A stretch of 64,000 nt of DNA from the IMG/VR virus record IMGVR_UViG_3300024239_000011, positions 248,001-312,000 of that record. The stretch is one strand, 5' to 3'. How positions within the stretch are numbered: the stretch's first letter is position 1; each line of letters opens with the position of its first letter. The notes below the pieces were generated by a model. It was not told the DNA's origin and searched no databases. It worked only from the letters and a program-made list of their open reading frames with translations. Shown here in pieces: positions 1,515 to 47,600 of the stretch. The translations under genes and the position numbers were made by a program.

Positions 1515-2468
1515 TCATACTGGGAATATTAATAGCTCAGTTTTCTCGGTGGCTGCAATTTTCTTCCCGTTGTCGGTTTCCACCTTGGTCTGCTGGATCG
1601 TGTATTTGGCATCAAACGCTTCAATACGCGCCCACGAGTAAAGGTCACGGATTTCTGGGCAGTCGTCATATGACAGCACCCACGGGTGTGGACATACCCG
1701 CAGAAGGTCTGCCATGCGGCGGTGATCGTCCTCGGTGAAGGCATGCTGGTACAGATCACCGCCCTTCATGTAATACGGCGGGTCCAAATAGATGAAAGCT
1801 GGTCGGCTGGTGTCGGTGATCATTGCAGCAAAATCGCTGTTGGTGACCCTCGCATCGACCGAAATAAACTGCTTGTGGATCAGGTCGATTTTCTTGCAGA
1901 TGTTGGATGGACTCCAACGGCAATCAATTGGGTACTTGGTATTGGCATCTTGGTTGCGCCCACCTAATGGACCGCCGGATTTGACGCCGAGACCTGAGTA
2001 GGAGATTTGGTGGATCGCCAGCTTCCGGAACCCACATTCAACTATTTCGCTGATAGTGGTTGGGGTTGGATTGTCCAAGAAGAACTGCTTGTAGTCGTCA
2101 AACGCCTGGATGGACGGCTTAAAGCTATTGACCAGTTCCTTTAGCTCTTCTGGATTGTTGATGACTGCGTTCCATAGTGAGAAAATTCCTACATCCTTGT
2201 CGTTGATCCAGAAGGATCGATAGCCAAATGTCTTCTCTTTTGCGTTCTTTCCCTTGGTTGGTGTATCAAAGGAGAACAACAAATCAAACGGGTCTTGTGA
2301 TACCTGCTTGGTGTGGTCGTTGTCTTCAAGCACCATCAGTCCCACGCTACCGCCGCCGAAGAATGGCTCACGATATTCCATCGCATCGTTGCTGGTAGCA
2401 GCAATGGCGGTTAGAATTTCATCGCGGAACTTGGACTTTCCGCCCGGATACCGAAAGAATGAAGCCAT
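1515..2468 (-). CDS. Dam/D12-class DNA adenine methyltransferase
   Basis: FRYPGGKSK, EPFFGGGS (motif I), YLDPPYY (motif IV), WVLSYDD, terminal ELLI. Confidence 0.92.
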   Translation of the reverse strand: MASFFRYPGGKSKFRDEILTAIAATSNDAMEYREPFFGGGSVGLMVLEDNDHTKQVSQDPFDLLFSFDTPTKGKNAKEKTFGYRSFWINDKDVGIFSLWNAVINNPEELKELVNSFKPSIQAFDDYKQFFLDNPTPTTISEIVECGFRKLAIHQISYSGLGVKSGGPLGGRNQDANTKYPIDCRWSPSNICKKIDLIHKQFISVDARVTNSDFAAMITDTSRPAFIYLDPPYYMKGGDLYQHAFTEDDHRRMADLLRVCPHPWVLSYDDCPEIRDLYSWARIEAFDAKYTIQQTKVETDNGKKIAATEKTELLIFPV

Positions 2469-2477
2469 TTCAACTCC

Positions 2478-3443
2478 TTAACCAAATAAGTCTTTGTTTA
2501 TCGCAGATAGGCTGGCTTCTGGACAATTTTTATCTTTGATGGTTAACGTTTTGGCGAAATGGTCCGGTATGGATATTTCTATTGAGAATTTTAAGTCATC
2601 CTCGACTTTACTACTTGCGTTATGTAATCGGAAATTAACTTTCCAATACTCGGTTGTAATCATATAGATGCGGGCAGCTTCGTCCATTTCGGGTGTTAGA
2701 CCGGAAAATAGGGATGAATTGTCGGGGATATTCGTGTAGAGGTGTTTTATTTTTCCGAAGTTGGTTTTAGGGTATGGAAGTGACCCGTTTACATTGATTG
2801 GGTATACTGTAATGTAATCTGATTTTCTTGGGTCGGTGCGTAGAACTGCTTTATAGTAGTCGTGCGTTCCCAGGATGGTTTGGACAATCCCATTTACTAG
2901 TACGTCGCTGGGGGTACGTTGAAAGATCGAGAAAATTATGTTGGTAAGTTGTTGACACAATTTGAGCGGCTTCACATCCAGCCGGTGCCAAAGCGACCCT
3001 ATGTGAGGGGTTAAAACGCTGAGTGTGTCTTTAATCGCGGTGCGCTCGGCGTCGGTTAACTCACATCCACAAATGGTTGTAGTTCTTTCTGAAATACGGA
3101 GCGATTTCTGTTCATCGCTGTTGTGTTTAAGGGATATTCCGCGTCGAATTGACGGGTTGTGTAAAAGAACATCACTTACGTCACCTCCAACAGCTAGGTG
3201 ATCCGATAGGCAAATAGCATTAAGGTTTGAACAATCGTTCAAACCTTCCGTTGCTAAAATATAATCGAGTAGAGTGTTACCAGCAGCCAACATCAGCCGA
3301 TATTCATAGGACGTGCCATTGTATTGAAGGTCGGCAAGTTCTGCCTTTTTCAAATAGTAGGATTTGTCCAGTCGGAGTGTTGCCCCTCGCATGGCAGCGG
3401 CGTCCATAACACTTGCTTCGAACGCATCACCTTTATTAGTCAT
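2478..3443 (-). CDS. HaeIII-family type II restriction endonuclease-like protein
   Basis: NKGDAFE, GDVSDVL, GISLKHN, LGTHDYYK and FRLHNASSKVEDDLKF resemble HaeIII-family blocks (GDVRD, SIKHNH, FRIHNASTKVE.SLKF). Confidence 0.8.
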   Translation of the reverse strand: MTNKGDAFEASVMDAAAMRGATLRLDKSYYLKKAELADLQYNGTSYEYRLMLAAGNTLLDYILATEGLNDCSNLNAICLSDHLAVGGDVSDVLLHNPSIRRGISLKHNSDEQKSLRISERTTTICGCELTDAERTAIKDTLSVLTPHIGSLWHRLDVKPLKLCQQLTNIIFSIFQRTPSDVLVNGIVQTILGTHDYYKAVLRTDPRKSDYITVYPINVNGSLPYPKTNFGKIKHLYTNIPDNSSLFSGLTPEMDEAARIYMITTEYWKVNFRLHNASSKVEDDLKFSIEISIPDHFAKTLTIKDKNCPEASLSAINKDLFG

Positions 3444-4667: not shown

Positions 4668-4947
4668 GCGACAACTCCGAAACAAGAGGAACGGACAACA
4701 AATATGCCGCTGAAGGCGGCTCAGCGGCAATATATTTGTCCACAAGATGAATGGATGTTTTACTTACAGTCACGCATGATTAAGTAATCCCATGCTTGAT
4801 TTCCAGTTGGTAAATGTCCGCATTCTTCTTGGAACAGCATAGTGGGAAGCAAGACGCTGACCAGAATGAGAATGGTGAGAACGATGGGTGCTACGAGGGT
4901 GATGAACGCAATCGGTTTCATGATCCGTCCTGTGTGGGGGAAATCCC

Positions 4948-5304
4948 CTACCGTATACACTCTGCATACAAAGGGAGCAAATCGTTATATAGAGCCATCA
5001 CATCACCTCCGTTCTTTTGCACATAGAAGCTATGTGGTGGTTGGGTACCTTTCATTTTGTTGCACTCTTGACAAGCGGCAACAATGTTGATCCAGCTATG
5101 GGCGCCACCCTTCGAACGCGGGATTATATGGTCCCGCGTTGGATGATCCATGATCTTTCCGCAGTAGGCGCAACGATGGTTCTGAGCTTCTGACAGCCGG
5201 GAAAGCGACACCCCGATCCCATCTGGGTCGTAGCTGCATTCCCGGCGCAAATCTGACCAGATCAACTGGACGCCCATATCATCGCGCATCAAACGCTTCT
5301 CCAA
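4948..5304 (-). CDS. HNH endonuclease
   Basis: CAYCG...TRDHIIPRSKGG...NIVAACQECNKMKG. Confidence 0.9.
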   Translation of the reverse strand: MEKRLMRDDMGVQLIWSDLRRECSYDPDGIGVSLSRLSEAQNHRCAYCGKIMDHPTRDHIIPRSKGGAHSWINIVAACQECNKMKGTQPPHSFYVQKNGGDVMALYNDLLPLYAECIR

Positions 5305-6302
5305 ATCTCAACCAGAATAGCGTTGTCGATGGTAGCCGAATCGACAGCCAACAAACCTTCTTCAATGATCTGGTCGATAGTTTGAAAATTCACTTCTAGT
5401 GCGGTGTTGCTCATTTCATCCACAAGGTTTTTGGGGCGAAGTTCCATTTCACGGACTTGGAACATCCGTTCCAGTTCGTCGCGGATGGTCGCCATTTCCT
5501 CGTAGGACAAATCAACATCAATGGTAACGCGGGCGTACACGTCTGGGGTCAAATACTTCGACGGGTCTGCGATAATATCTGAAAGATTGGTCGTGATGTA
5601 TTTCGGGCAGTTTTCCCAATCGCGATAGATGGGCTTGCCGCCGTGTTCGATCAGCATGCAACCGCGTTCGAAGTCCCATGCGTCGGCGTAGTTGTGAGGG
5701 AACGCATTACCGATATAGTGAATGTTGCCCGACCGCTGGCGTTTATGGAAGTGTCCGGTGAATACGTACTCCTGATTAGTGAACAGGTTCTTGTTGACCG
5801 TCCCGTGGTCCTGGCATTCGATCATCGCGTTAAGCAGAAAACCGGGGATTTCAAAGTGTCCAAAGACGTATTTTTCTTGCCACTCGGGAATACTCTTCCA
5901 TTCGTCTCCAATCATCCAGGGCTGGAAGCGCGTGTCACCAATGACCAATGGATGCTGAACGACCGTCACTTTTTCAAGCAATTGACCAAACCGCGCGGAT
6001 GTCACGTCACGTTTGTCCTTGAAAAACATATCGTGATTTCCCACGACAAAGTAAACGTTCGTGAAATATTCTGCCAGCCGTGTCAACCCTTCAATACCGT
6101 AATTTAGTGTATTCACGTTGATAGTGCTGCGATTATGGAAGAAGTCACCCAAGAAAATACAAGTTTCAGCACCAAATTCATCGGCTTCCTTTATAAACCA
6201 ATCAATAAAATCCAAACAGTCGTTGTTATGGGTGTCTGAATTACTTCGGCACCCAAAATGTATATCTGTGAAGACTGCTGCTTTCTGGAATGCCATCGTC
6301 AT
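5289..6302 (-). CDS. gp47: T4 gp47-like (Mre11/SbcD) recombination nuclease
   Basis: Metallophosphoesterase motifs DIHFG, GDFFH, GNHD, GHFE, GHFH; typical gp55-gp47-gp46 order. Confidence 0.95.
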   Translation of the reverse strand: MTMAFQKAAVFTDIHFGCRSNSDTHNNDCLDFIDWFIKEADEFGAETCIFLGDFFHNRSTINVNTLNYGIEGLTRLAEYFTNVYFVVGNHDMFFKDKRDVTSARFGQLLEKVTVVQHPLVIGDTRFQPWMIGDEWKSIPEWQEKYVFGHFEIPGFLLNAMIECQDHGTVNKNLFTNQEYVFTGHFHKRQRSGNIHYIGNAFPHNYADAWDFERGCMLIEHGGKPIYRDWENCPKYITTNLSDIIADPSKYLTPDVYARVTIDVDLSYEEMATIRDELERMFQVREMELRPKNLVDEMSNTALEVNFQTIDQIIEEGLLAVDSATIDNAILVEIWRSV

Positions 6303-6344
6303 TGTTCACCTTTTGTTCTTAGTGGATTGTCGGTATTCTCGGTA

Positions 6345-6566
6345 TTATTTCAGTCGCTCGACATACCGACGCACGTAATCGCCCCAATCACCAACTACCG
6401 CATTATCAGAACCGTTGATTTCAACGCCGTAGCTCGCGATACTAACCCTAATCCCTGGTGGAATAGGCATACGCACGCTCTTGATTTCAAGATCGGGGTT
6501 CCTGGCAACAAAAATCAAAATACCGTCGTCAATCTTGACTAGATTGATGGGATAATGGATAACCAT
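6345..6566 (-). CDS. Hypothetical protein
   Basis: ORF with AGGA RBS, co-directional. Confidence 0.6.
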   Translation of the reverse strand: MVIHYPINLVKIDDGILIFVARNPDLEIKSVRMPIPPGIRVSIASYGVEINGSDNAVVGDWGDYVRRYVERLK

Positions 6567-6586
6567 GTTCGTTCCTTTTTCCTGTT

Positions 6587-6796
6587 CTAATCATCTTCTA
6601 GCGCATTTTGACGCAGATCGTCAAAAAATGCTTTTACTTGTGGGTCAGATTTTGGTTCATATCCGGGGAGTGTTGTGACATGGGAACCCGGTAATTTTTG
6701 TGCGCTCATTGGTGATAGCTCAATAAAGTCGTCAACGACGACCGTTGGCATAACCCGCCGTATCTCAGTGATTTTGCGTTGCATTTCGTCGTTCAA
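6587..6796 (-). CDS. Small protein containing a major-capsid (gp23) Gol-region-like fragment
   Basis: IRRVMPTVVVDDFIELSPM resembles gp23 IRRVMPTVIA..LVGVQPM; shares DPQVxxFF tail with the upstream ORF. Confidence 0.7.
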   Translation of the reverse strand: MNDEMQRKITEIRRVMPTVVVDDFIELSPMSAQKLPGSHVTTLPGYEPKSDPQVKAFFDDLRQNALEDD

Positions 6797-7014
6797 TCTT
6801 CGACCTCGGTTTTGTTTTGCTCAAAGAAATCCACCACCTGTGGGTCGGGTTCCTTCATAGGTGAAATTTTGGGTGCGCATATACCGGGCATGTCGGTTAG
6901 AACTTCCGGCATTACTCTGCGTATTACGGGAAGGATAACCTTCGTCATACCTACCGGTCCATCCAACAATGCCTGTTTGGTTTCTAGCCAGTGGGACGTG
7001 GTTGGTTTGATCAA
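6793..7014 (-). CDS. Small protein containing gp23 N-terminal and Gol-region-like fragments
   Basis: WLETKQALLDG and KVILPVIRRVMP match jumbo-phage gp23 N-terminal motifs. Confidence 0.75.
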   Translation of the reverse strand: MIKPTTSHWLETKQALLDGPVGMTKVILPVIRRVMPEVLTDMPGICAPKISPMKEPDPQVVDFFEQNKTEVED

Positions 7015-7259
7015 TTCTCTGGCTCCCGACTGTTCGCGAGAAAGAATCCACGCCCGCTCGTTTTCGCGGATTTCTTCTTCGGTTCGATCTCGGCGGTAAT
7101 CTCATGCGACATCGCTGCAATAATTTCAGCCTCAATATCGGGGTGTGCTTCATGATGGCGAAACTGCTGCCCGAATTGCGGCTCGTCTATGATGAATTTA
7201 ATCAAGGGCGTCCATCGCTTCTTGGCGCTGTTGCTCAAAATAGCTGCGAGTGTCGCCAT
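7011..7259 (-). CDS. Small protein containing a gp23 internal helix-like fragment
   Basis: DIEAEIIAAMSHEITAEI resembles gp23 D(I/V)EAEIMAALAQEITAEID; KRWT resembles the preceding ARWT. Confidence 0.7.
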   Translation of the reverse strand: MATLAAILSNSAKKRWTPLIKFIIDEPQFGQQFRHHEAHPDIEAEIIAAMSHEITAEIEPKKKSAKTSGRGFFLANSREPEN

Positions 7260-7554
7260 GGATTTCTTCCATGCGTTCTTTAATTACCGCGAGGACTTTT
7301 TTAGTATGTGGACTGATTTTTTCGGGCGACCTCGCGAATTTGTCCAGTAAACGCCGGATTTTATGAGGATGGGTACGAACCATTTGATCGTAATAGTCTG
7401 GATCGATCTCATCACCATCTTCATCTTCGAGCGCCAGTTCATCGGCGTCTACGTCCTTATAGCAGTCCTCGTCGGGGACTTCCGTATCATCTTCAATGAT
7501 CGACGGACGGTAAAAATTTGCCGTATGACCCTTACCGTAATATCGTCCAGTCAT
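7198..7554 (-). CDS. Hypothetical acidic protein
   Basis: ORF coupled to the upstream gene by TGATG overlap. Confidence 0.6.
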   Translation of the reverse strand: MTGRYYGKGHTANFYRPSIIEDDTEVPDEDCYKDVDADELALEDEDGDEIDPDYYDQMVRTHPHKIRRLLDKFARSPEKISPHTKKVLAVIKERMEEIHGDTRSYFEQQRQEAMDALD

Positions 7555-7865
7555 CAGTCAAAATCCTTCATTGCATCCGCACGCTGCGCTTCCCAGAAAT
7601 TCGTGATTGCTGTGGTATTACTGCGTTGCGCCGCGAGTAGCTGTTCAAATTCGGTAACCCAATCAAGAAACCCATCAACTTCGTGTGGCTCTACGATTTC
7701 TGCGGCATATTCACGCATGTGACCCATGAACTCTGCGCACAATTCCGCTGGGATCATGGTCAGATCGATAACGAATCGGTTAAAGTCGATATCACCGTAT
7801 TGGTCTTGGTGAACCACGATTTGATAAACGTTTTCATCCCCTTCGGGAATTACATTTATGGTCAT
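7554..7865 (-). CDS. Hypothetical protein
   Basis: ORF overlapping the folD stop (ATGA). Confidence 0.65.
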   Translation of the reverse strand: MTINVIPEGDENVYQIVVHQDQYGDIDFNRFVIDLTMIPAELCAEFMGHMREYAAEIVEPHEVDGFLDWVTEFEQLLAAQRSNTTAITNFWEAQRADAMKDFD

Positions 7866-8752
7866 CGGAAAATTCCACTGTCATGGGTTAAAGTAATACC
7901 GCGTTGCCGGGCACACGCCATTACCGTGTTGTGCATCAAGCATGCGATGGTCATTGGTCCTACGCCGCCCGGAACTGGGGTGATCGCCCCCGCGACCTCT
8001 TTCACGGCATCAAAGTCAACGTCGCCGCAGAGTTTACCATCGGGAAGGCGGTTGATACCCACGTCGATAATCACCGCCCCTGGCTTCACCCAATCTTTCT
8101 TGACCAGTTTCGCCACGCCAGTAGCCACCACCAGAATGTCGGCGGTACTGCATTCGGCTTCGATATCCTTGGTATGCTCATGGCACATTGCGATAGAGCA
8201 ATGCTCGTGTAACAGCAACGTAGCTATTGGTTTGCCCACAATGGTCGAACACCCAACTACGACCGCCTTTTTGCCGGTCAGATCGTGCCCCAGATGCTTC
8301 TTGATCAGCATGAGGCATCCCATGGGGGTACAGGGAATGATCCCGCCGCCATTAGTGACCAACAAACCCACGTTGTCGATGTGGAAACCATCTACATCCT
8401 TTTCTGGGGCGATGGCATTGATGACCGCGTGCTTACTGATGTGGGGCGGGAGGGGAAGTTGAACCAGAATGCCGTGAACCTGATCACTCTGGTTGAGCAT
8501 GTCGATATAGCCGAGTAAACTGTCCTGGGTGGTATGGGTGGACAGATTGAACATCAGTGATTGGACGCCAATTTCCTCGGCGGCTTTCGCCTTGTTGCGT
8601 ACATAGATATGGCTTGCCGGATCATCACCGACCATGATCACCGCAAGGCATGGTACGGTACCATGTCCTTTGAGTTCCGTGATTTGGTGGGAGAGGGTTT
8701 GAAGAAGGCGTTTTGATTCGGCTTTGCCGTCTATAATTTGAGCATCTGGCAT
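7862..8752 (-). CDS. folD: Bifunctional methylenetetrahydrofolate dehydrogenase/cyclohydrolase
   Basis: IIDGK, YVRNK, GILVQLPLP, EKDVDGFH, PCTP, DVGINR, ITPVPGGVGPMT; start chosen at MPDAQ. Confidence 0.97.
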   Translation of the reverse strand: MPDAQIIDGKAESKRLLQTLSHQITELKGHGTVPCLAVIMVGDDPASHIYVRNKAKAAEEIGVQSLMFNLSTHTTQDSLLGYIDMLNQSDQVHGILVQLPLPPHISKHAVINAIAPEKDVDGFHIDNVGLLVTNGGGIIPCTPMGCLMLIKKHLGHDLTGKKAVVVGCSTIVGKPIATLLLHEHCSIAMCHEHTKDIEAECSTADILVVATGVAKLVKKDWVKPGAVIIDVGINRLPDGKLCGDVDFDAVKEVAGAITPVPGGVGPMTIACLMHNTVMACARQRGITLTHDSGIFR

Positions 8753-8840
8753 ACTGTGCGACCTTTCGGTTTGATCCGAAAGAGTACCAAACTGGCAAAA
8801 CATGGAGCAATTTTATTCATCATGTTTTGCCAGTTGGTTT

Positions 8841-10580
8841 CTACTTCAATACCAGCGCATATACCGCGTTACCACAATCATATATAAGGTTCCACCCGTT
8901 CTGGCGCATGTTTTCGATTTCGGTTTGTGCAGGATCAAAATGGTCTAACTTTCCCTTCAGTTTGTGCTTTTGAAACCCATTTCGAGATTGTAAATTCATA
9001 TTTCCTTTGAAATAGAAATAGTTGGGTGGGGAGGTGTTGATATATTCAAATCCAAGTGCCTCGTATAATTTCCCCCGTCCCCAACGTAAATCTGCATAGG
9101 AGATGATGGAAGACGGATTATGATGTGTAATGAACGCATTCAGTAATTTACCAGCACCACCAATCACCGTCGTATTAAGTCCGCTTGAATACCGTAAAAT
9201 TTCCCACTCATATTTGTGCGAATACCGGCTTTTGGAAAAACTCATTGCTGCAACAAGATCATTATCAAAAAGTAGACCATATGTGACGGCGGCATGTGCA
9301 TGCCCTTGTAGGTGGGTTTCGGAAAAAAACATCTTGCTTGTTTGATGATCCAATTCGACTACTTCAGTCTTACGGGCATATATGCTATTAGCATTTCCAA
9401 GAATTGCACAAATACGGCTTTCAACGATTTCGCGTTGAAGCAACCATTCATTTTCCCATACATGGATTAATGTTATTCCGCGTTCTGTGCATAGCTTTGT
9501 TTTCATGGAATGGTAGTTCTTTGGTTTCCCGGCATTGATTGAATGCCACCATAACCCATCGTACTCGAACGCAATGTTTTTTGAGGGTACGAAAATGTCC
9601 AATTCGTACCCTTTTAACAAATGCCTGTTATTCGTTGTTACATCATAACCGAACCCGCGAATGAAATCCGTTAATTCGCGTTGTCCACTCGATACGAAGT
9701 GAACTTTTGGGGTAATTCCATGTTGTTTGAACCGGTGACACACCGGGAAAATAGATATCCCCAACTGTTGGGCGATTTCTTTTAATGTATATGTTTGATT
9801 TTGTTCTTTAAGCCAGTCAATATCATCCAGTTTATCTGCGACTCCTGCTGGAAAATGATATTGGTTTGGTTTACGTACCCCTATGGACGTGAATAGCTCT
9901 TGTAGCTTCTCTTTAATGTGAAGAACTTTCATGGGATTGTCACGCCCATACTTTGCGATCCAGTGGTTTTTGGTTTGCTTAATAACCTCTGAATTTTGAG
10001 ATGGGTAATCTGTTCCAAACTTTTGGCGGTTGGTTTCTTTGACTTTTTCGATGATTTTGGTTGATTGAGTTGGCCAAGCAACTCCATGGTTGTGAAGATT
10101 TGATTGCTGAACTTTATCTAGAATTTCAGCATTCATGGTAGGTGACTTCACCCCATATCGATCAATACAAGTTTGAGCGGTTGCGTGTTTGACAGCATCC
10201 GTCATTGATGCGAAATCCGCACCGTATTTTTCTCGGTTAGTCGTTTTCCGCTTGGTAATGATGTTTTGGCGATCTGTTTCCGAGCGATGTTCGCGTGCTT
10301 TTTCAGCGTTTTCTCGGTTACACGCGCATACCGACTGGTTGCCGCAAAATTTTAGATAGCCTTTATTAAAGGAAACAAAGGTAGGGCGCGAACCGTTAAC
10401 GCACATTATCTCGGGGACGGTTTTTCCATTCAAATATAGCCACAGTTTTTCTATATCAGGGACATCGAAGCCTCCAATAAAAGCTTCGATGTCTGCCCAA
10501 AAGTGTTCTTTTGCTATCTTCAGTTTTACTCGTGTATCAGAGTGTGATGATAGCATTTCAAGGTGGTGTTCTCGGTACAT
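8841..10580 (-). CDS. Hef/Vsr-like free-standing homing endonuclease with N-terminal repeats
   Basis: Repeated T..(E/K)KYG...P units; ELDIFVPSKNIAFEYDGLWWH; IHVWENEW; IYARK; SYADLRW; IYDCG; AT-rich. Confidence 0.8.
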   Translation of the reverse strand: MYREHHLEMLSSHSDTRVKLKIAKEHFWADIEAFIGGFDVPDIEKLWLYLNGKTVPEIMCVNGSRPTFVSFNKGYLKFCGNQSVCACNRENAEKAREHRSETDRQNIITKRKTTNREKYGADFASMTDAVKHATAQTCIDRYGVKSPTMNAEILDKVQQSNLHNHGVAWPTQSTKIIEKVKETNRQKFGTDYPSQNSEVIKQTKNHWIAKYGRDNPMKVLHIKEKLQELFTSIGVRKPNQYHFPAGVADKLDDIDWLKEQNQTYTLKEIAQQLGISIFPVCHRFKQHGITPKVHFVSSGQRELTDFIRGFGYDVTTNNRHLLKGYELDIFVPSKNIAFEYDGLWWHSINAGKPKNYHSMKTKLCTERGITLIHVWENEWLLQREIVESRICAILGNANSIYARKTEVVELDHQTSKMFFSETHLQGHAHAAVTYGLLFDNDLVAAMSFSKSRYSHKYEWEILRYSSGLNTTVIGGAGKLLNAFITHHNPSSIISYADLRWGRGKLYEALGFEYINTSPPNYFYFKGNMNLQSRNGFQKHKLKGKLDHFDPAQTEIENMRQNGWNLIYDCGNAVYALVLK

Positions 10581-38665: not shown

Positions 38666-41600
38666 TTAGTTACCCCAGTAATGGGTGGCTGGTTTTTCCC
38701 GTAGGAATTGTGCCATCGCACTGTTGGAGTATTGCAGCCCGCGATACGAGCGGAGGTGCAGAATAATGTTGTTCTGCCCGTTCGTCGGCGCCGGGATGTT
38801 CCGGCGGAACTTCAGGATGGTTCCGTCGATGAACCAATCCTGATACCGTATCAACTGTTCTTCAATCGTTCGCGTTTCACCGGTTTCAGGATCAACAAAT
38901 CCTTCGTGTTCGATAATAACGCGAATATCTAGAAGCTCAGCATCATATGCGCGTGACAATTGATACCAACGCCCAGCATCAGCCTGGGTCACGCCTTTCG
39001 TCCCAACTGGGATGGCATCTAGCTGTCCTTGGAAGCCCTTATCCAACAATCCTTCCCAGCGATACCCACCGGGAATATATTGCGGTGCCCCACCATCGAC
39101 AACAATTGTTCCAGCCGGGTAAGACGCACCGGAAATTTCCCAGTTCGAGACGGTGGCAGAGAAGGTCAGTACCCATCCTTCAGTTGGGGCATATGGGAAT
39201 TTCACTACAACTTCATCCGTGTCATTGCGAGTAACGGTGTAGCTTTCCTTCCGATACTCTTTCACCATCACCTTGCCGTGATCAACATACTCTGCCTTGA
39301 TCATTACGGCATCGTCATTCATGGGGTCGAACCAACCAGGGAGAATAAATTCTTCCTTTAGCCCATCAGATACTTCCATATGATTTCGATAAATGTTGCG
39401 AATACCAGATGATGTTCCGCCAGTACCACGACGAATATTCAACAGACGGTTATTCACCACGTCGATGCCCATGTATTCGATTCGTTCACCATCTACAAAT
39501 ACGGCTTCTGGGGTCAGTAGCGGACGTACCGACGAAACAACGTTATTCCCAAAGAATGCAGTTGCTAATGCATCAGATGCACTGTCACTGATTGAGAAAT
39601 CTTGTCCGTCTACCCGACGTATGATCAAATGCCCATGTTCGGTAATCGCTGCTGAAATCGTAACTGCACGAAGATCGGCGTTCGAGTTGATTGCCATTGC
39701 GATGTCCGCGTGAGTGATGATCCCATCCGCAGCACCACCAGCGGCATTGTCGCTGACAACCACGTGTACTGGTGGAACTGGTGTTGATGACAGTAGATCA
39801 ATGTTGACCACCAACGTTGCAGTGGTTGCATACATTGTCACGTCTTTTCGTGACAGAATAGCAGCTTCATTATTAGTCACGAACACTTTTGCATCAACAA
39901 CCTGCATATGACGATCATCAAAATCCAATGCAGTATTCAGCTTGGTCTTGTGGGCATCAGCAATGCGTAGGTATTCCCATTCGTCCTGGCTGTTCTTGAA
40001 TAATCGGAAACCAACCGGCTGTTGCGCGGAGCGATTGGTAAACGTCGTTACAACCACACGCCAATCCCCACTATGCCGATTGTTGAAGCTCACGAGCGGG
40101 CGGCTTCGGTTATCATCCCATCCAAAATACGCATCCCAACTGAGATTATCCCAGCCGATGGTGCTGTTTTGAATGGTGTAATCCATGCCGTAGATATTAC
40201 GGCGCCCGTTTGTGTTGACCCACAACGAATTTGCATCGCTGGGGACACGGGTCAGTGGATATTTTCCATTTACAGTCGCGGTGAAGACCTCAGTCCGAAT
40301 ACCCATCGCTTCATCGTCACTAAATGTGGTGACAGTAATCCAGTCACCATCTTCCAACGTCAGCCCTGCAAACGTTGGACCATAGAGATGCAATTCGTTT
40401 CCGTTCTTGATGTCGTAGTCATACTTGCCATGTTCATACCAAACAAAGCAAATATCGGCATTCTTGCTGGGTGCATCAAAGAAGTGAATCTCGCGGGTAG
40501 CTTCTTCAACCGCACGAGCCAATGATGCTGCGTAGTTTCCGGTATTACGCATTCCGGCGCTGGTAATCATACGACTCCAACGACCGCGCCCCAAATAGAG
40601 GATCATATCCCCATCTTCGAACCCGAACTCGTTCTGATTGGTTTGATTTGGGTTAGGACGATTCATCCCTTTCGTTGCCCACGTACCAGCAAACGCCACT
40701 CCCAGCCAATTACGAACATTGGTGCCTTCTGGTTTTGGGGTGTTATCAAATGGCACGCCATCATAACCACCATCGTCAAACCCGAAATACCCTTCTATAA
40801 CAAAGTAATCACCCGCTTTTAGATCGTCATCACCATCACATGGTAACGCATCATTAGCATCGATTGGCCCTCGGAAACGCTGCGGAATGGTAAAACTGCC
40901 CACATCCACCGTTCCCGTCGCATCACCACCGACTGTTCCTGCGGGATACACGGGGACAAGTGGAGTCGTATTCTGCCCAATCCAGATTTGGGTGTCAGCA
41001 ACCGAGGTAATTGGACGTTCGAAGCGGTATGCAAAGCAACCGCCGTCACCCAGGAAGTACCGAGTTGTTGGTGGCATCAGACGAATACCACGACCAACGT
41101 CATCCGCTACCAACGGATCGCCAATTGACGTTCCGGCTGGTTGACCGTTCTCACAGATCAAATCAGCTTCGGTGATCTTTTTATAAACCAATACAGCCCC
41201 ATGGTGCGGTACCGTTGGGGACGGGACATCAGTCAGAATAATCGGCTCACCGGCAGTATATTGATACTGATGAGTACGAACTTTGACAATGTTCGGGGTG
41301 TTGAATGCGACGATAGCAACCTCTCCCGGTTCACCATCAGTCAGAACAACTTCATGAGTACCGGTATCATGTTTGATCACGGAATAATCACCGAGGGACA
41401 ACACTTCGCCGTCACGAACAACCGATATATGTGACTGAGAATAGGTAATCCCTTCTGGATTTTTCAGCATCAATGGCGGCATGATGCCATTAGTCGGGCT
41501 AAACCGAGCGATTTCCACAATGCGCTGGTTCTGATTGTTTTGGAAGTCATTCGATGCCGCATCCTCGATCTCGTATGTCACCGTCACGAGGGTTCCTTCA

Positions 41601-44600
41601 GTGGGGGCAACCCCAAGGAACAATTGCTGTTCGATAACATTAAATTCGGTGATCTCAGTGACCGGTTGAGTGCCAGCTTGTGTCCAAACGCGAATATTTG
41701 GAGTTGCTGCCGGAAGTTTGGTCAATGTAAATTCACCCACGCCAACCGACACAAACGTATCGATGTTTTCCACATTGGTACCACCAGTAGAGAATGATGT
41801 GATCTTGATGACCGCACCCTTCGGCGGGGCAATACCCAATTCAACTACACCAGTGTCCCAGTGCAAGTAATACTGATCAGCACGTACCGCAGTATCGCTG
41901 CTAAACAATGGATCACCGGTCATTGGGTTGCGCGAAACCATTTCAAGCATCATGTTCTCGCCGTCCAGCCCGACCGTGACAAATACCGTTTCGCGGCTTG
42001 ATGGCTTTTGTCGCAGTTCAAAGTGCGTCGTAACATCATCAGCTTCGTAACGCGCCGATACAACAGACGGCGCACCAGCGGTGGCTTCGGTGTATACGGT
42101 GATGCCTAGGCTATCCGCCGTCCGCGTTGCTATCAGTTCTTGTGGACGATTTTCATCCATATAAGGGTTGGTCATGGCAGGTTTGCCCTGTAATTCGATG
42201 CGGACTTCCGTACCTTGCACAACACTTTCATCGAAAATGACATGCCATGTGCCAGCTATATTTTCGAGATGATAACCATCTAGTCTACGGCGTCCGTTGA
42301 CATACACACGTGCATGCCAATTTAGGTCATCCGCACTACCGATAACGCCTACAACAGGCGCCCCATCAAGTTGGAAATCTTGTTGCCCGTCGAGGGCTTC
42401 AAAGGTTTTGGACGGACCCGCCAGGAAGAAACCACCATCAACAATTACATCATCAAACCCGCTGGTAGAAGCCGGGGCAGTAAACGTGCCTCCCATTATG
42501 TTCATATCGTAGTAACGAGTTGATTTCTTCTCGCTCATGGTTGTTTCTACACCATCTACAATATCATTGGTGACAACCGCAACCGTGATTAGATCACCGT
42601 GATTAGGAAGTGCGTTGAACCTTACTTTCCACAGGTCTTCTGTTGTATTGTAATAGAAATCATATGCATCGGAAAGTTGAACTATGCCGTTGTATTCAAC
42701 AACCACTACATCGCCGTCCATCTTGTCGCGAATGCTATCGAAGATATGGTCGCCCCATCCAAGGGAGTTGTCCATTCCATCCTGCCAATATGTGACAGGG
42801 ACTTCATCTTGACCGTTGTACACGAAATTCATCACTGGAACATGGTTGCCCACATCTTCAGAGAACTTGGTGTCCAACAGATCGCCACCATCCATGCGGG
42901 TACCCTTGAAGTTGATATCCAAGAGTTCTCGCATATCTTTCGCAGGCATACCAGGGGTTGGGCGATAGTAAAGCATGATGCGCTCAGCCTGGGTCAACAA
43001 ATTCGGGTCCATGGTATTGTCGTATGGAACCGTAATATTGTCTCCTTTCTCATTAACCAGGGTCAACACATCATCCCGGTACGTGAGTAGGTTCATCGGT
43101 ATGTTGTCACTACCAAAGATAATGTCACTTGGAAGTGACGCTTTGATTTCGATAGTGTTGGCATCAACATACTTCATAACCTTATATGCGCCCACCATGG
43201 TCGTTTGCGAACGACGACGAATGTAAATGGTCTGTCCATCCTTAGGCGTTTCATTAATACGCAGACGTACCCCTGGATCGGTCTTATAGGTGATCATTAG
43301 TTGATCACCGGATTTTGGTGTTGGACTGATCATCACAATTTGCCCATTACCATACATAAACGTGTACAAAGGATCGGCATTTGTTACACGCGGCGTTCCG
43401 TTGCGCGGAATAATCGCGTCAGGTGTAATCAACTCCCAATTAGATTGATCGGTTGCAAAATCCACGCTGGTATGCGAGGTGGTACACACAAAAACTGATC
43501 CGCTGTGTTTAGCCAAATCATTGACCACATACACCTTTTCCGCTGCCCATGCCTTAACTCCACGTAAATTGCGCTTTACTTTTACGCTAATAGTGGATTC
43601 GTGATATGGTATGTTTTTAAGTGCAATTGTACCGGTGCTTGTCCCACGAATAACGATATCTTCGCGTTGTTCCATCGAGACAATTTCATAGTCAGGTGTG
43701 TAGGTTTTTGCATCATTATCTCGTGAGATTTCTAACGCATCACCATCGGTGTAATAATTTGCCGTTGTTGCCCAATCAAGTAGACGACCATCCACGTAGA
43801 CTTCGAGATCATGTTCATCTACCCGGAACGGCAATTCAAACAGCTTCGTGTGTCCATCACCAGTCAGCACTACTTCTGGAATTGGCTGGGGGATAACCAC
43901 ATAAGCGGCAATCTGGGGGATTGCATCGCTCCAATGTTTTAGTTTTTCGCCGTCAAAATCACCAGTGGAAACATACGATTTGATGCACAAGTAGTTCTTT
44001 GTGCGCCAACGGATAATATCCCCAACCACATACGAAATATTAGCGTCATATGCAGACGGATTCATATCATAATGCGGTGCCACCACATTGTGGTTGGCTG
44101 GGGTTTTAACAATGACTCGGTTGGATGCCCCAGGTTTTAGGCTGGCAATGCGTGTTGGAATTGGGTGGTTGGGTGAACGCAAATACACAACTTTCCAATG
44201 ATCTTGGTTTAGACCATCGTAGTTATGGAACCACACACGATCACCAAGACGATGCGCACGCTTGGTGGTCGATTCCTCACGTTGACCATAGTGTTCACGG
44301 TACAACTTCAACAGAGCTTGCTCACCATCCACGTACCAATCAATCCATTTTACACGGTCAAAGTGAATCGTAGTCTTCATCGAGCGTACCGGATAATGGT
44401 CGTCCGCGATTTTCTGGAAGTTTTCGTACCAATCCTTGTGATGTCGGCTGTTACGAAAATCCGTGGCCGTATATGGATCAGCAATAGTGTACGTACCATC
44501 CCCATTCCATACCACGTCGATTACTGCGTGATCCTTAATGGTACGATCCAATGGGAATACTGGCTTATCAAAGTCGGTAACACGGGCATGACCGGTTTCC

Positions 44601-47600
44601 ATCGGGAGAATCTTCGACAATGTAAAATCGCGGATTTTCGAGTGGTACGGCTTGACTTCGTTGATGTATCCAATAATTGAGTCGGTCTTGTCTTTACGCA
44701 ACACCGGTTCTTGAATCAACGGCTCGTTGATACCCTTGATGAACAGAAACGATGTTTTGAATGCCCAATCGACCATCCGGTGTTCGGTATGAGCGTAATG
44801 TACCATAGCAAAGAACAGGGCATTGATTTCACCCTTGGACAGTAACCCTGGTATATCAGCATCACCCATCAATGCTTTCAGCATAGCCTTGAACTCAAGG
44901 CTACCATCACGGAGGCGGACAGTCTCCCAATATGCGTTCAAATCAGTTGGATGATTGTCCTTAATGATTTGGCGCCGACTTTCGTCGTAGAACCGATCAC
45001 TCAGCTTAATAGTACCATTCTTGTAGGCTACCATTTTCCAACGACCGAAGGCTTCACCATCAACCTTGCCCTGGTATTCCTGCCAGTACCAGAGGTCAAT
45101 GTCCTTTTTGTCAATCCGGATCAGATCGCCTGCTGAGAAACCAACCTCACGGTCGTGGATATCGCGTTCAACTTCACTTGGGAATACATAACGCGGGATG
45201 TTCAGCTTCGAATAACCAGTATCATACCAGTCAACGGTAGACCAGAAATCAATAGTTTTATAATGCTGAACTGCATCGCAAGACCAACGACCGGCAACGG
45301 TCGGATCGTAACTCCACAGAGACCAGAAGCCATAGGTTGAAGTATTACCACGAACCAGAACTCGGGTACCACGTTCTAGAACGAAGTCAGGGTCGATTTC
45401 CTTGGCATTGCGTTCGTCAAATGAGTCAACTTCCATGTGGTAGTCTAAATCACCAACTACCTCAAACCAATTGTTGTTGTCCACGCCAACCACTGCGTTC
45501 GAAACACACTGTATCCACTTGGTGCCACGATTGTCATTACCACGACGAACATAGATATTAGCCCCTTCCGGTAGGTGGCTACCGGCGGCACAATCAGTGG
45601 CGCGAACGAATACCTTGTCGTTTTCGTGGTAAACGTAGATGCCGTTCTCCGTGGCATCTATCTGGTTCTTCACCAGTACGCGGTTGCCCTCCCGGACAAA
45701 CACACGGTCGATGGTACCAGGGAATGTACCGCCAGTTAAATCAACGTTGCCGTCAATCGTCGCGGTGGCCAAATCGACATCAATCTTCGCAAGCAGACCT
45801 ATACTTGAACCAACATGCTTCTGCGCTACTAATGCCCGTGGAGATTTTTCAGTGAACGTCAGCAAACCTTCATCGGACGATTGAAGATACGTAAGATCAC
45901 CTTGCATGACCGGGCGCTTGGTCAGCATGGTATTCACTCGCTCTACAATGATGCGACGTGCCATGTAGCGGTCATTGAACCATGACTGGCGCGGACGGAA
46001 GAGGTTGCCATAACGTTCCACCGTGGACAGGCTCAGGTCGGGAACGTCCATGTATTCGACGTTGAAGCCAACCAACGAGTCGGTCATCTTTCGCCACAAT
46101 AATGGATCGGGGTATGACCGGTCATCACCTTCGCGCATCAACACCCATTCACGGTGAACGTTGTCTTCGCGGTCGGTACGACGATAGTTAACCTGAACAA
46201 TACTGTTCTCATCGTTGAGCAGATAATCAACACCTGAAATGATTGTCGCATCTGGTGAGATTGGTGCGAACCATGGCATATCAAATGTCGATGGGTTCTC
46301 AATGAACTTAGCAACCTGAGTGGTCGTCAATTTGCGCCATTCAACCGGGGGAACTGTTGCCTTGTTTTTGACCCAGAAATAGTATACGGTTTTATAATCA
46401 CCGGTAGCCGGATCATATTCGGTGCGCTCACACCATGCCGGGTTGTTGGCATCCTTTACTGATCCAGTTGGTTTGGCGTCAAATGCTTCGATTGCCTTAC
46501 CCTTGTTGATTTCGACTTGACGTGCCCATTCGGTGGGAGGAACCGTTGAACGGGTCCACTCGTACACATCAATCGTGGCACGGGGCGCCAAACGACCCCA
46601 CACGTACTTGCGATACTTGTTATCACTAATCTCGTAGTCGAGGAACTTGACGGTACTCAAATCCCACCACAGGCGATGTTCTTCTCCACCACCCCAGGCA
46701 ATTTCCGGATTCATACGATGGTATTTGGGGTCGCCATTATTGTATACTGCCGGATCAATTTCCAGTTTGTACCAAATTTCTGCATCAGCCGTGCCCGGTA
46801 TGATGCCCTTGGCAGGATCATACAGGTGAACGTACTGCTGTACCTCAGTGGTTTTCTTGTCATAGATTACCGCATTGAAAATACGATTGTTATCTACTTT
46901 TGCTGGTTGGATACGAACCGGTATGGTATCGAAATTATTACCGTTGTATTGATATACTGCATACTTACCATTACCCGCATCATCTACATAGGCAAGGTCA
47001 CCTGACAACCACTGCCCGGTATTCAGCGTTGCATTGCGTGCAGATATGGTTGCAAAACGGCGTGGGAAGAATTTCATCACGGCAGGACCAGTGGTTCCGC
47101 CCTGCGAAGTCCAATCAAACATGTCGTCAATTACCACCGGAATGATGAATTCCGTAGTAGATGGTACTGACTTCACATAATGAATACCACGTACATCCGG
47201 TATCGACTTGGTATCTGTAGTGATTACGATCAAGTCGTCAATAGCAAGATTATGGGTGTCCGAAACTGTGATTTTAGTTTCAGTATCCGACACATATTCG
47301 ACCTTGGTAACATTAACAACAGCCGTACCGAGGTTCTGAACAGAGAACATCTGCCATTCGTCATTGATGTCGTATACCCAAATTTTTTCACCCGTCACAA
47401 AGTTCTTACCCTTCTGAAGGATTTCGTAGTGAACACTGGACAAGTCGGTAAGATCAAGGGCATAATGATCAGATTCATCCACACGGGCATAACCAGCAAC
47501 CGGAAGATCACCCTCACGGGTTTCATTGATTGCGCGTAGCGGGAAAATGGTTTCCATTTCCCGGTTTGGTTTCACCACCCACCGGTTCTCGGTTTCTACC

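What the first reader, a model, noticed from the sequence alone, without database searches (positions are those of the whole stretch)
6587..7259. Three tandem mini-genes built from major capsid protein fragments, two covering the Gol region
Seen: 6793-7014 has WLETKQALLDG then KVILPVIRRVMP; 6587-6796 has IRRVMPTVVVDDFIELSPM; 7011-7259 has DIEAEIIAAMSHEITAEI. They are translationally coupled (overlapping stops and starts), and two share a DPQVxxFF(D/E) plus acidic tail not from capsid, so they look like maintained genes rather than debris. Known: these match conserved T4-type gp23 segments; the RRxxP...QPM segment is the T4 Gol peptide that binds EF-Tu and triggers the Lit protease, and capsid proteins trigger other defences such as CapRel. 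Inference: non-structurally expressed capsid-epitope decoys against capsid-sensing immunity, EF-Tu modulators, or poisons of competitor capsid assembly.
Basis: partly seen in the sequence, partly recalled or inferred. Interest (0 to 1): 0.85.

Follow-up and report, generated by a model that had tools for sequence, protein, structure and literature searches.

The report
Small phage genes displaying capsid-protein segments
Three tiny, intact genes of a 543-kb jumbo phage each carry a short conserved piece of the phage's own major capsid protein, and similar capsid-piece mini-proteins recur in related giant phages, which suggests an undescribed class of capsid mimics whose function still has to be tested.

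Summary
Three contiguous minus-strand ORFs hold segments of the phage's own T4-type major capsid protein (MCP), which lies 48 kb away. They are C (7011-7259), B (6793-7014) and A (6587-6796). C has part of the long helix. B has the first ~20 propeptide residues, in register with the start codon, joined to the start of the Gol segment. A has the Gol core.

With profiles built from foreign MCPs, A, B and C are the only non-MCP hits among 6,282 genome ORFs (E 3e-6 to 2e-4). Synonymous sites are saturated while the peptides are kept. The frames have positive coding potential.

A, B and C have no orthologues. The design recurs, though. A widespread unnamed family (84 clusters) has a Gol-like N-terminal head on a small folded domain, inside arrays of small genes. 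One array also has a helix-segment head. The cultured relative Sinorhizobium phage Phosso carries an unannotated Gol-like stretch.

My best reading is that these are flexible mimics of unassembled MCP that compete for its partner. EF-Tu-linked, capsid-triggered defence is the leading candidate, and scaffold or capsid targeting is a close rival. Function, expression and start codons are unproven.

The parts
7011..7259 (-). Mini-gene C. 82 aa from ATG 7259, or more likely 64 aa from TTG 7205, which overlaps the stop of the upstream gene by 8 nt.
   Evidence: ORF. Coding potential is 0.28 bits/codon for the full frame and 0.34 from the TTG. One public gene call used the 64-aa form.
7083..7139 (-). 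MCP-derived segment of C (DIEAEIIAAMSHEITAEIE). It equals own MCP residues 189-207 and the T4 gp23 stretch DADAELSGILATEIMLEIN.
   Evidence: 14/19 identical with only 3 identical codons. Foreign-MCP profile E 2.7e-6 genome-wide. T4 alignment. Coordinates checked.
6793..7014 (-). Mini-gene B. 73 aa from TTG 7014, or 51 aa from ATG 6948 as called publicly.
   Evidence: ORF. TTGA overlap with the stop of C, with GGGAG 10 nt upstream. Coding potential 0.12.
6958..6999 (-). B residues 6-19 (TSHWLETKQALLDG). They match MCP propeptide residues 6-19, in the same register from the start codon.
   Evidence: N-terminal MCP profile, E 1.7e-4, model positions 6-19 on B residues 6-19. 10 of 16 identical to the clade consensus. 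A variant contig shows D18A and P20S here.
6892..6945 (-). B Gol-segment head (TKVILPVIRRVMPEVLTD). The 12-residue block KVILPVIRRVMP is identical to the own MCP.
   Evidence: 12/12 residues identical with 10 nucleotide differences. Two further synonymous differences in a variant contig.
6587..6796 (-). Mini-gene A. 69 aa from TTG 6796, or 65 aa from ATG 6785.
   Evidence: ORF. TTGA overlap with the stop of B, with GAGG 6 nt upstream. Coding potential 0.08.
6704..6763 (-). A Gol-segment head (IRRVMPTVVVDDFIELSPMS).
   Evidence: BLASTP E 2e-6. Gol profile E 3.4e-5 genome-wide. Matches the head of the Gol-head family model, E 0.002.
6796..6846 (-). B non-capsid C-terminal tail (DPQVVDFFEQNKTEVED). 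Its last codons carry the GAGG that serves A.
   Evidence: Shared with A and with the gene at genome 246099-246347. Weak likeness to the tails of neighbouring genes.
6590..6649 (-). A non-capsid C-terminal tail (SDPQVKAFFDDLRQNALEDD).
7198..7865 (-). Two upstream small genes (118 aa at 7198-7554, 103 aa at 7554-7865). Both end in xFFE/FWExQRxxAMxDxD. They have no capsid segment.
   Evidence: Their tail profile also hits two genes at genome 334883-335497, always at the extreme C-terminus. The link to the A and B tails is only suggestive: B scores E 1.4 when A and B are left out of the seed.
8841..10580 (-). Hef-like homing endonuclease, a paralogue of the one immediately downstream of the MCP gene. 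A possible vehicle for moving MCP DNA here; circumstantial only.
   Evidence: E 1e-55 to PA5oct EST35_0155, which sits next to that phage's MCP. The paralogue is at genome 204047-205696.
5289..6302 (-). gp47-type metallophosphatase directly downstream in the same-strand gene run. It shows the non-structural context.
   Evidence: Pfam Metallophos (weak) and neighbouring gene calls. Relatives at 43-49% identity.

Best explanation
What is shown: C, B and A are real, selected small genes of a 543-kb jumbo phage of the Phosso/Atu_ph07 group. They sit in a same-strand run of replication, recombination and small accessory genes, not in the structural module. Each is a chimera of two parts. The first is a short linear segment derived long ago from the phage's T4-type major capsid protein. 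B has the propeptide start plus the start of the Gol/N-arm segment, A has the Gol core, and C has part of the long helix. The second part is a short non-capsid, acidic C-terminal tail. They are far too short to be capsid subunits.

What is inferred: they work as mimics of unassembled capsid protein. They would be flexible peptides that occupy whatever partner normally recognises these segments on nascent MCP. The only experimentally known partner of this segment is EF-Tu, through the T4 Gol interaction. EF-Tu is the substrate in Lit abortive infection and a structural component of Avs7 complexes that sense MCP. I therefore take the most likely role to be a competitive blocker or trap of EF-Tu-linked, capsid-triggered defence, made before or alongside the MCP. 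Binding, timing and effect are all untested.
For: The segments are real and specific.

The peptides are conserved while synonymous sites are saturated. Only 3 of 13 codons in B and 3 of 14 in C are identical under identical residues. dN is 0.12-0.26 with dS undefined. The simulation gives P<5e-5 for B, C and the pooled set.

The frames code and the overlapping frames do not.

The design recurs:
- A 374-kb phage has a 108-aa protein with a Gol head, Pfam Gp23 29 bits, in an array of 28 small genes.
- An exhaustive search finds 84 cluster representatives of that family, 45 of them aligned from the head onward.
- In that family the head is the most conserved part (column identity 0.65, against 0.46 for the body and 0.26 for the linker). 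Yet the head is modelled without secondary structure (pLDDT 52-58), in front of a confident small domain (pLDDT 94-97). That pattern is typical of a linear binding motif.
- Several members also keep a propeptide remnant in front of the Gol head, the same layout as B.
- A 371-kb phage has both a Gol-head gene and a strand-plus-helix-head gene in one array, Pfam Gp23 32.3 and 26.3 bits. This mirrors B/A and C here.
- Cultured phage Phosso has a Gol-like stretch, 37.5 bits.

Literature: the Gol region binds EF-Tu domains II-III. It is the most conserved part of gp23, and the first ~100 residues of gp23 bind EF-Tu more stably (PMC3014915). Avs7 senses MCP with EF-Tu built into the complex (bioRxiv 10.64898/2026.01.04.697583).
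Against: - No experiment and no co-fold supports binding to EF-Tu or to any sensor.
- A and B have lost the second half of the Gol core, the A-x-D/E-I-V-G-V-Q stretch that both the MCPs and the Gol-head family conserve most. They may be decaying relative to that family.
- In T4 a Gol peptide activates Lit, so a mimic could harm the phage unless it binds unproductively.
- EF-Tu is too abundant to be titrated.
- The helix segment of C, and of the 116-aa protein in the 371-kb phage, has no known link to EF-Tu.
- A, B and C have no orthologues anywhere, so selection could only be inferred from comparison with the MCP. Part of that signal could predate capture.
- The codon usage of A and B sits at the low end for this genome.
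- Start codons and expression are unproven. Pieces found in an RNA library do not show transcription.
Confidence: 0.35

Rival explanations
1. Assembly-linked proteins. The propeptide start, N-arm and long helix line the inner face of HK97-type shells, where scaffold and core proteins bind. Small proteins carrying these segments would dock on the scaffold or core. They would either be loaded into the procapsid, as a capsid-targeting tag like the T4 internal-protein signal, or they would time or limit MCP-scaffold assembly.
For: - B keeps MCP residues 6-19 in register with its start codon. Several Gol-head family members keep a propeptide remnant. EF-Tu binding would not obviously need this.
- The two recurrent regions, Gol strand and strand plus helix, are both parts of one MCP face. 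This rests on textbook knowledge of T4 gp23 and HK97 and was not computed here.
- Only MCP-derived heads are found, and none from other phage proteins.
- T4 internal-protein genes also lie outside the structural module (own knowledge).
Against: - No protease-site pattern beyond chance.
- The propeptide stretch holding the likely maturation site is deleted in B.
- The genes lie among replication and recombination genes.
- There are no virion proteomics.
- The isolated head is modelled as disordered.
Confidence: 0.27
2. Weapons against co-infecting related phages. These would be dominant-negative capsid fragments that poison a competitor's capsid assembly or folding.
For: The head of the 374-kb phage's protein is only 13/24 identical to that phage's own MCP, and it follows a family-wide consensus of its own. 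Arrays of small accessory genes are typical of conflict loci (inference).
Against: The head of B is 12/12 identical to its own MCP, so it would hit self first. The MCP segment is over 90% conserved across the clade, which leaves little room for discrimination. There is no direct evidence.
Confidence: 0.08
3. Evolutionary debris. These would be chimeric ORFs left by rearrangements that moved pieces of an MCP copy, perhaps with the Hef-like homing endonuclease, and that happen to stay open. They would have no function.
For: - No orthologues.
- Weak codon usage in A and B.
- Uncertain TTG starts.
- Loss of the GVQ motif, invariant in the 24 clade MCPs of A4.
- Hef-like endonuclease paralogues sit next to both the MCP gene and this cluster.
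- The phage is clonal in all samples, so ongoing selection cannot be measured.
Against: - Three consecutive open frames with no gaps and with ribosome-binding motifs.
- Perfectly kept peptide blocks lie next to heavily diverged flanks, with saturated synonymous sites.
- The fragments are not colinear with the MCP. The order is helix piece, then N-terminus, then Gol.
- The same two MCP regions recur as conserved heads in other phages.
Confidence: 0.12

Closest known systems
T4 Gol peptide of gp23 (Gol-Lit-EF-Tu exclusion system)
   Same: A and B carry the stretch that aligns with the T4 gp23 segment around VRRAIPNLIAFDICGVQPM. This lies in the first quarter of the protein, where the Gol region is placed. 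That region is the most conserved part of gp23 and binds EF-Tu (PMC3014915).
   Different: Gol is part of the capsid protein itself, not a separate gene. A and B keep only the first half of the core plus SPM. Binding to EF-Tu and any relation to a Lit-type protease are untested.
Unnamed 'Gol-head' small-protein family of uncultured jumbo phages, defined here (alignment A2)
   Same: An N-terminal MCP Gol-like segment, sometimes preceded by a propeptide remnant as in B. It sits on a protein of about 100 residues encoded among many small overlapping genes.
   Different: That family has a complete Gol core ending in GVQPM and a folded body (WIExQP...MWK...LRWS). A and B match only the head of its model (E 0.002 and 0.0085), and they have a short acidic tail in place of the body. 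This genome has no full member.
Sinorhizobium phage Phosso PV764938.1, frame upstream of CDS XYS97433.1
   Same: The closest cultured relative, with 81% MCP identity. It has a Gol-like stretch outside its MCP, Pfam Gp23 37.5 bits, with SPM in place of QPM as in A and B. The stretch lies about 3 kb from its gp47-type phosphatase and HNH genes.
   Different: The open frame is longer (about 206 aa from the first ATG) and has a different C-terminal part. The stretch is unannotated and may lie upstream of the true start.
T4 internal proteins and their capsid targeting sequence
   Same: Small accessory proteins, encoded outside the head-gene cluster, whose short N-terminal signal takes them into the procapsid (own knowledge). 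B starts with the first residues of the MCP propeptide.
   Different: The T4 signal is not derived from gp23 and is cut at an L/I-x-E site. No such site stands out here, and packaging is untested.
Mimicry-type phage anti-defence proteins (for example the DNA mimic Ocr)
   Same: A small, acidic, early-type protein that would act by imitating a molecule the host recognises (inference).
   Different: No described case imitates the phage's own capsid protein. My literature searches for capsid decoys or mimics in phages found none.

Membership tests
Pfam PF07068 Gp23 (T4-type major capsid protein) | A match to the capsid domain model at or above the gathering score of 24.4 bits. | tested here: not met
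   hmmscan gives no Gp23 hit for A, B or C even at E<=1. The own MCP scores 270 bits. A, B and C hold only 19-32-residue segments.
T4 Gol peptide (functional element) | Positional homology to the Gol stretch of gp23. | tested here: met
   The own MCP segment that A and B match aligns with T4 gp23 ...MVRRAIPNLIAFDICGVQPM..., in the first quarter of gp23 as described in PMC3014915. The exact T4 boundaries were not verified.
T4 Gol peptide (functional element) | An intact ~20-residue core, of which 13 residues matter for activity. | tested here: inconclusive
   A and B keep IRRVMP and PM but lose the A-x-E-I-x-G-V-Q stretch. I could not obtain the list of critical T4 residues.
T4 Gol peptide (functional element) | Binds EF-Tu domains II-III and licenses Lit cleavage. 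| not testable with these tools
   No complex prediction or assay was available.
Gol-head small-protein family (alignment A2) | An N-terminal Gol-like head. | tested here: met
   Family model against all genome ORFs: A scores E 0.002 (model positions 10-38) and B scores E 0.0085 (positions 6-24).
Gol-head small-protein family (alignment A2) | A conserved folded body, WIExQP...MWK...YxISEELxTxLxLRWS. | tested here: not met
   Neither A nor B aligns to the body. Two headless body-type genes exist elsewhere in the genome, at 464642-465174.
Pseudogene or gene remnant | Broken frame, or neutral substitution pattern. | tested here: not met
   Frames are intact. dN is 0.12-0.26 with saturated dS, and the simulation gives P<5e-5. 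Coding potential is positive, against negative in the overlapping frames. Caveat: the comparison is with the MCP, not with orthologues.
T4-type internal proteins (capsid-targeted) | An N-terminal targeting signal removed at an L/I-x-E site, and presence in virions. | not testable with these tools
   L/I-x-E motifs occur at about the chance rate (by eye, on the sequences). No proteomic data exist.

The most novel reading that the evidence does not exclude
Jumbo T4-type phages encode a previously unrecognised class of anti-defence proteins. These would be stand-alone, flexible copies of the most conserved linear segments of their own capsid protein (the Gol/N-arm segment and the long helix), mounted on small carrier domains or tails. 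They would trap or blind host systems that detect nascent capsid protein, through EF-Tu or directly. A, B and C would be one lineage's version of this.
Probability: 0.3. Interest if true: 0.9.

Novelty: new variant of a known kind. Interest (0 to 1): 0.75.

Why it matters
The Gol stretch is the most conserved part of T4-type capsid proteins, and it has never been settled why. Its only known partner, EF-Tu, now appears in several capsid-triggered immune systems.

Finding that stretch conserved as a free, flexible head on dozens of unrelated small phage proteins points to a partner that reads it as a linear motif. It also gives handles to find that partner.

If the proteins block capsid sensing, they would be the first phage decoys built from the phage's own capsid protein. 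If they target cargo to the procapsid, they reveal how giant phages load accessory proteins. Either way, a cultured relative (Sinorhizobium phage Phosso) makes the question testable.

Tried and rejected
1. Direct homologue searches for A, B and C among 5.8 billion proteins found only the phage's own copies. The three other contigs that carry them are 100% identical.

2. Synteny. Relatives found through gp47 in viral and metagenome collections are at most 49% identical. None has MCP fragments nearby.

3. Population variation from public runs. The phage is present in subsurface and wastewater samples, but it is identical there. The pieces in RNA libraries do not prove transcription.

4. One variant contig end gives only five differences.

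5. A T4 late-promoter motif is absent from the window. Sigma-70-like and terminator scans show nothing decisive inside the cluster.

6. Origin by carry-over with the homing endonuclease. Paralogues flank both loci. But the fragments have the wrong polarity and position for simple co-conversion, so I keep this only as a lead.

7. An apparent inverted copy of the MCP 3' end downstream of the MCP was a chance protein-level hit. The only repeat there is a terminator-like hairpin.

8. The idea that the arrays display segments of many core phage proteins is rejected. Only the MCP head is detectable among 28 members.

9. Fold searches with the carrier domain gave no informative match in the PDB. In the viral library only uncharacterised phage proteins matched.

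10. A common origin of the A and B tails with the tails of neighbouring genes is not significant once A and B are left out of the seed.

Full report
**Setting.** The window is bases 248001-312000 of a single 543,035-base viral record. Its major capsid protein (MCP) is a T4-type Gp23 (Pfam, 270 bits) at genome 205997-207193 on the minus strand. That is 48 kb from the finding. By MCP identity the nearest cultured phages are Sinorhizobium phage Phosso (81%, 469 kb), Agrobacterium phage Atu_ph07 (69%) and Pseudomonas phage PA5oct (69%).

The finding lies in a same-strand run of genes: a Hef-like homing endonuclease, FolD, two small genes of 103 and 118 aa, then C, B and A, a 73-aa gene, a gp47-type phosphatase and an HNH endonuclease. 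Further on come a HaeIII-like restriction enzyme, a D12 methylase and gp46. No strong terminator or promoter consensus interrupts the run. The clearest hairpin is at 4705-4729.

ORFs C (7011-7259), B (6793-7014) and A (6587-6796) are open on the minus strand and abut without gaps. Against the phage's own MCP the BLASTP results are as follows:

| ORF | Identity | E-value |
|---|---|---|
| A | 14/32 | 2e-6 |
| B | 17/38, with a 12/12 block | 8e-7 |
| C | 14/19 | 6e-7 |

A whole-genome tblastn with the MCP finds these three and no other short fragments. The only other hits are two short gp23/24-like paralogues near 337 kb. I also built profiles from 79 foreign MCPs and searched all 6,282 ORFs. 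Behind the MCP itself they return only A, B and C.

B also matches the extreme N-terminus of the MCP, with model positions 6-19 on B residues 6-19. It is therefore in register with the start codon. B thus has the layout MCP(1-22), a deletion, then MCP(62 onward).

The MCP stretch shared by A and B aligns with T4 gp23 around VRRAIPNLIAFDICGVQPM. The stretch in C aligns with T4 DADAELSGILATEIMLEIN. Calling the latter the long spine helix of the HK97 fold rests on textbook knowledge.

**Genes, not debris.**
- Under identical residues only 3 of 13 codons (B) and 3 of 14 codons (C) are identical. dN is 0.12-0.26 while dS is saturated. Random mutation at the observed density never preserved as many residues, in 20,000-50,000 trials for B, C and the pooled set.
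- The kept blocks sit beside flanks that have left the MCP consensus at positions more than 90% conserved across the clade. A uniformly decaying copy would not look like this.
- Coding potential is positive in the three frames (0.08, 0.12 and 0.28 bits per codon). It is negative in every overlapping alternative frame. A and B are at the low end for this genome.
- Both junctions are TTGA overlaps preceded by GGGAG or GAGG. Public gene calls prefer downstream ATGs, and the first 18 codons of C overlap the conserved tail of the upstream gene. The likely products are therefore C from TTG 7205, B from TTG 7014 or ATG 6948, and A from TTG 6796 or ATG 6785.
- One variant contig differs at five positions, all inside B. 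Two are synonymous changes in the kept block and two are codon changes in the N-terminal extension. These numbers are too small to weigh.

**The tails.** A and B share a DPQVxxFF acidic tail. A gene at genome 246099-246347 has the same tail. The two upstream genes and two genes at 334883-335497 share a related C-terminal motif (FFExQRxEAxxDLD), always at the very end of the protein. The link between the two groups is only suggestive. Part of the tail conservation may reflect the ribosome-binding site of the next gene, which lies within these codons.

**No orthologues, but a recurring design.** A, B and C have no relatives in any collection searched. No phage closer than 49% gp47 identity exists in those collections. 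Scanning larger relatives with Pfam Gp23 did turn up a second hit in a complete 374-kb phage: a 108-aa ORF whose N-terminus is a Gol-like stretch, 29 bits and above the Pfam cut-off. It sits in a tandem array of 28 small overlapping genes that all end in F.LRW[SA].

- **Breadth.** An exhaustive search of 1.84 billion representatives found 84 related clusters. In 45 of them the match begins within the first 16 query residues, upstream of or at the start of the head. All are metagenomic and unnamed. GenBank phage records hold no match at E 1e-3.
- **Head conservation.** The head is the best-conserved part of the family (0.65 column identity, against 0.46 for the body and 0.26 for the linker).
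- **Structure.** AlphaFold models the head without secondary structure (pLDDT 52-58), ahead of a confident beta-beta-alpha-beta-beta-alpha domain. The domain has no informative structural neighbour.
- **Layout like B.** Several members carry a propeptide remnant before the head, as B does.
- **A second phage with both head types.** A 371-kb phage has, in one array, both a Gol-head gene and a gene whose head is the MCP strand-plus-helix region. That is the same region as in C. Both pass the Pfam cut-off.
- **Another array.** A further contig shows the same array context.
- **A cultured relative.** Phosso holds an unannotated Gol-like stretch, 37.5 bits, in frame upstream of an annotated small CDS. 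It has SPM in place of QPM, as A and B do.
- **This genome.** It has no full family member. A and B match the head of the family model only.
- **Specificity.** Among the 28 array members of the 374-kb phage, only the MCP-derived head resembles any large protein of that phage.

**Interpretation.** It is shown that stand-alone MCP segments are retained under protein-level constraint. It is also shown that the same two MCP regions recur as N-terminal heads of small accessory proteins in several jumbo phages.

It is inferred that the heads act as linear motifs that engage a partner of unassembled MCP. For the Gol stretch the only known partner is EF-Tu, and the first ~100 residues of gp23 bind it more stably (PMC3014915). 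EF-Tu is the substrate of Lit. It is also a structural part of Avs7 complexes that sense MCP. I therefore rank a blocker or trap of capsid-triggered, EF-Tu-linked defence first, at 0.35.

A close rival, at 0.27, is docking on the scaffold or core. The docking could load cargo or time assembly. This rival explains the propeptide remnant and the helix segment more naturally. Competitor poisoning (0.08) and functionless debris (0.12) remain possible.

The main weaknesses are these:
- A and B have lost half of the Gol core.
- A true Gol mimic might trigger Lit rather than block it.
- Expression and start codons are unproven.
- Selection was inferred against the MCP rather than against orthologues.

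**Novelty.** I found no description of phage small proteins built from the phage's own capsid segments. Neither Pfam nor PHROGs has a family for the carrier domain. I rate it a new variant of known kinds, either mimicry-type accessory proteins or capsid-targeted cargo, because the function is open. The sequence-level phenomenon itself appears undescribed.

Noticed in passing
window 1515-3443 (minus strand): A HaeIII-like restriction endonuclease (2478-3443) and a D12-class adenine methylase (1515-2468) lie side by side between gp46 and the gp47 region. This looks like a phage-borne restriction-modification pair. The assignment rests on precomputed Pfam hits.
   Followed up: no
window 38666-53632 (minus strand): A single open frame of 4,988 residues. 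Not examined.
   Followed up: no
window 8841-10580; genome 204047-205696: Two paralogous Hef-like homing endonucleases. One lies 1.6 kb upstream of the mini-genes. The other lies directly downstream of the MCP gene, the same position as in phage PA5oct. More diverged copies lie at genome 174981-175847 and elsewhere.
   Followed up: partly
genome 336968-338628 (L003:1372-3032) and 334883-335497 (L130): Two tandem short gp23/24-like paralogues (254 and 298 aa). They start near the position of the MCP QPM motif. Next to them are two small genes that carry the FFExQRxEAxxDLD C-terminal motif.
   Followed up: partly
G001 157750-166878 (L165 and L174-L175); genome 464642-465174: A 374-kb relative has 28 tandem small genes that end in F.LRW[SA]. 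Each overlaps the next start. This genome has two such genes. The family is unnamed and appears widespread in uncultured viruses.
   Followed up: partly
L195:3736-4356 (Sinorhizobium phage Phosso PV764938.1, 182235-182855): A Gol-like stretch lies in frame upstream of the annotated start of CDS XYS97433.1, in an unannotated gap. The annotated start may be too far downstream.
   Followed up: partly
window 5200-8900: Four subsurface metagenome runs hold 97-100% of the sampled words of this stretch, and three other JGI contigs are 99.7-100% identical over it. Short contigs with 0-1 differences also lie on it in wastewater runs from other studies. The phage lineage seems unusually clonal and widespread.
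   Followed up: partly
window 6913-6962 (L088:12-61): One 1.9-kb contig from another sample differs at five positions within 50 bases at its very end, all inside gene B. It is identical over the next 1,660 bases. This could be a strain-level mosaic boundary or an assembly-end artefact.
   Followed up: partly
P0009 (1194 aa) and P0020 (2564 aa): Two very long predicted proteins match the small carrier domain 19 and 31 times. They could be arrays read through as one frame, or true polyproteins.
   Followed up: no
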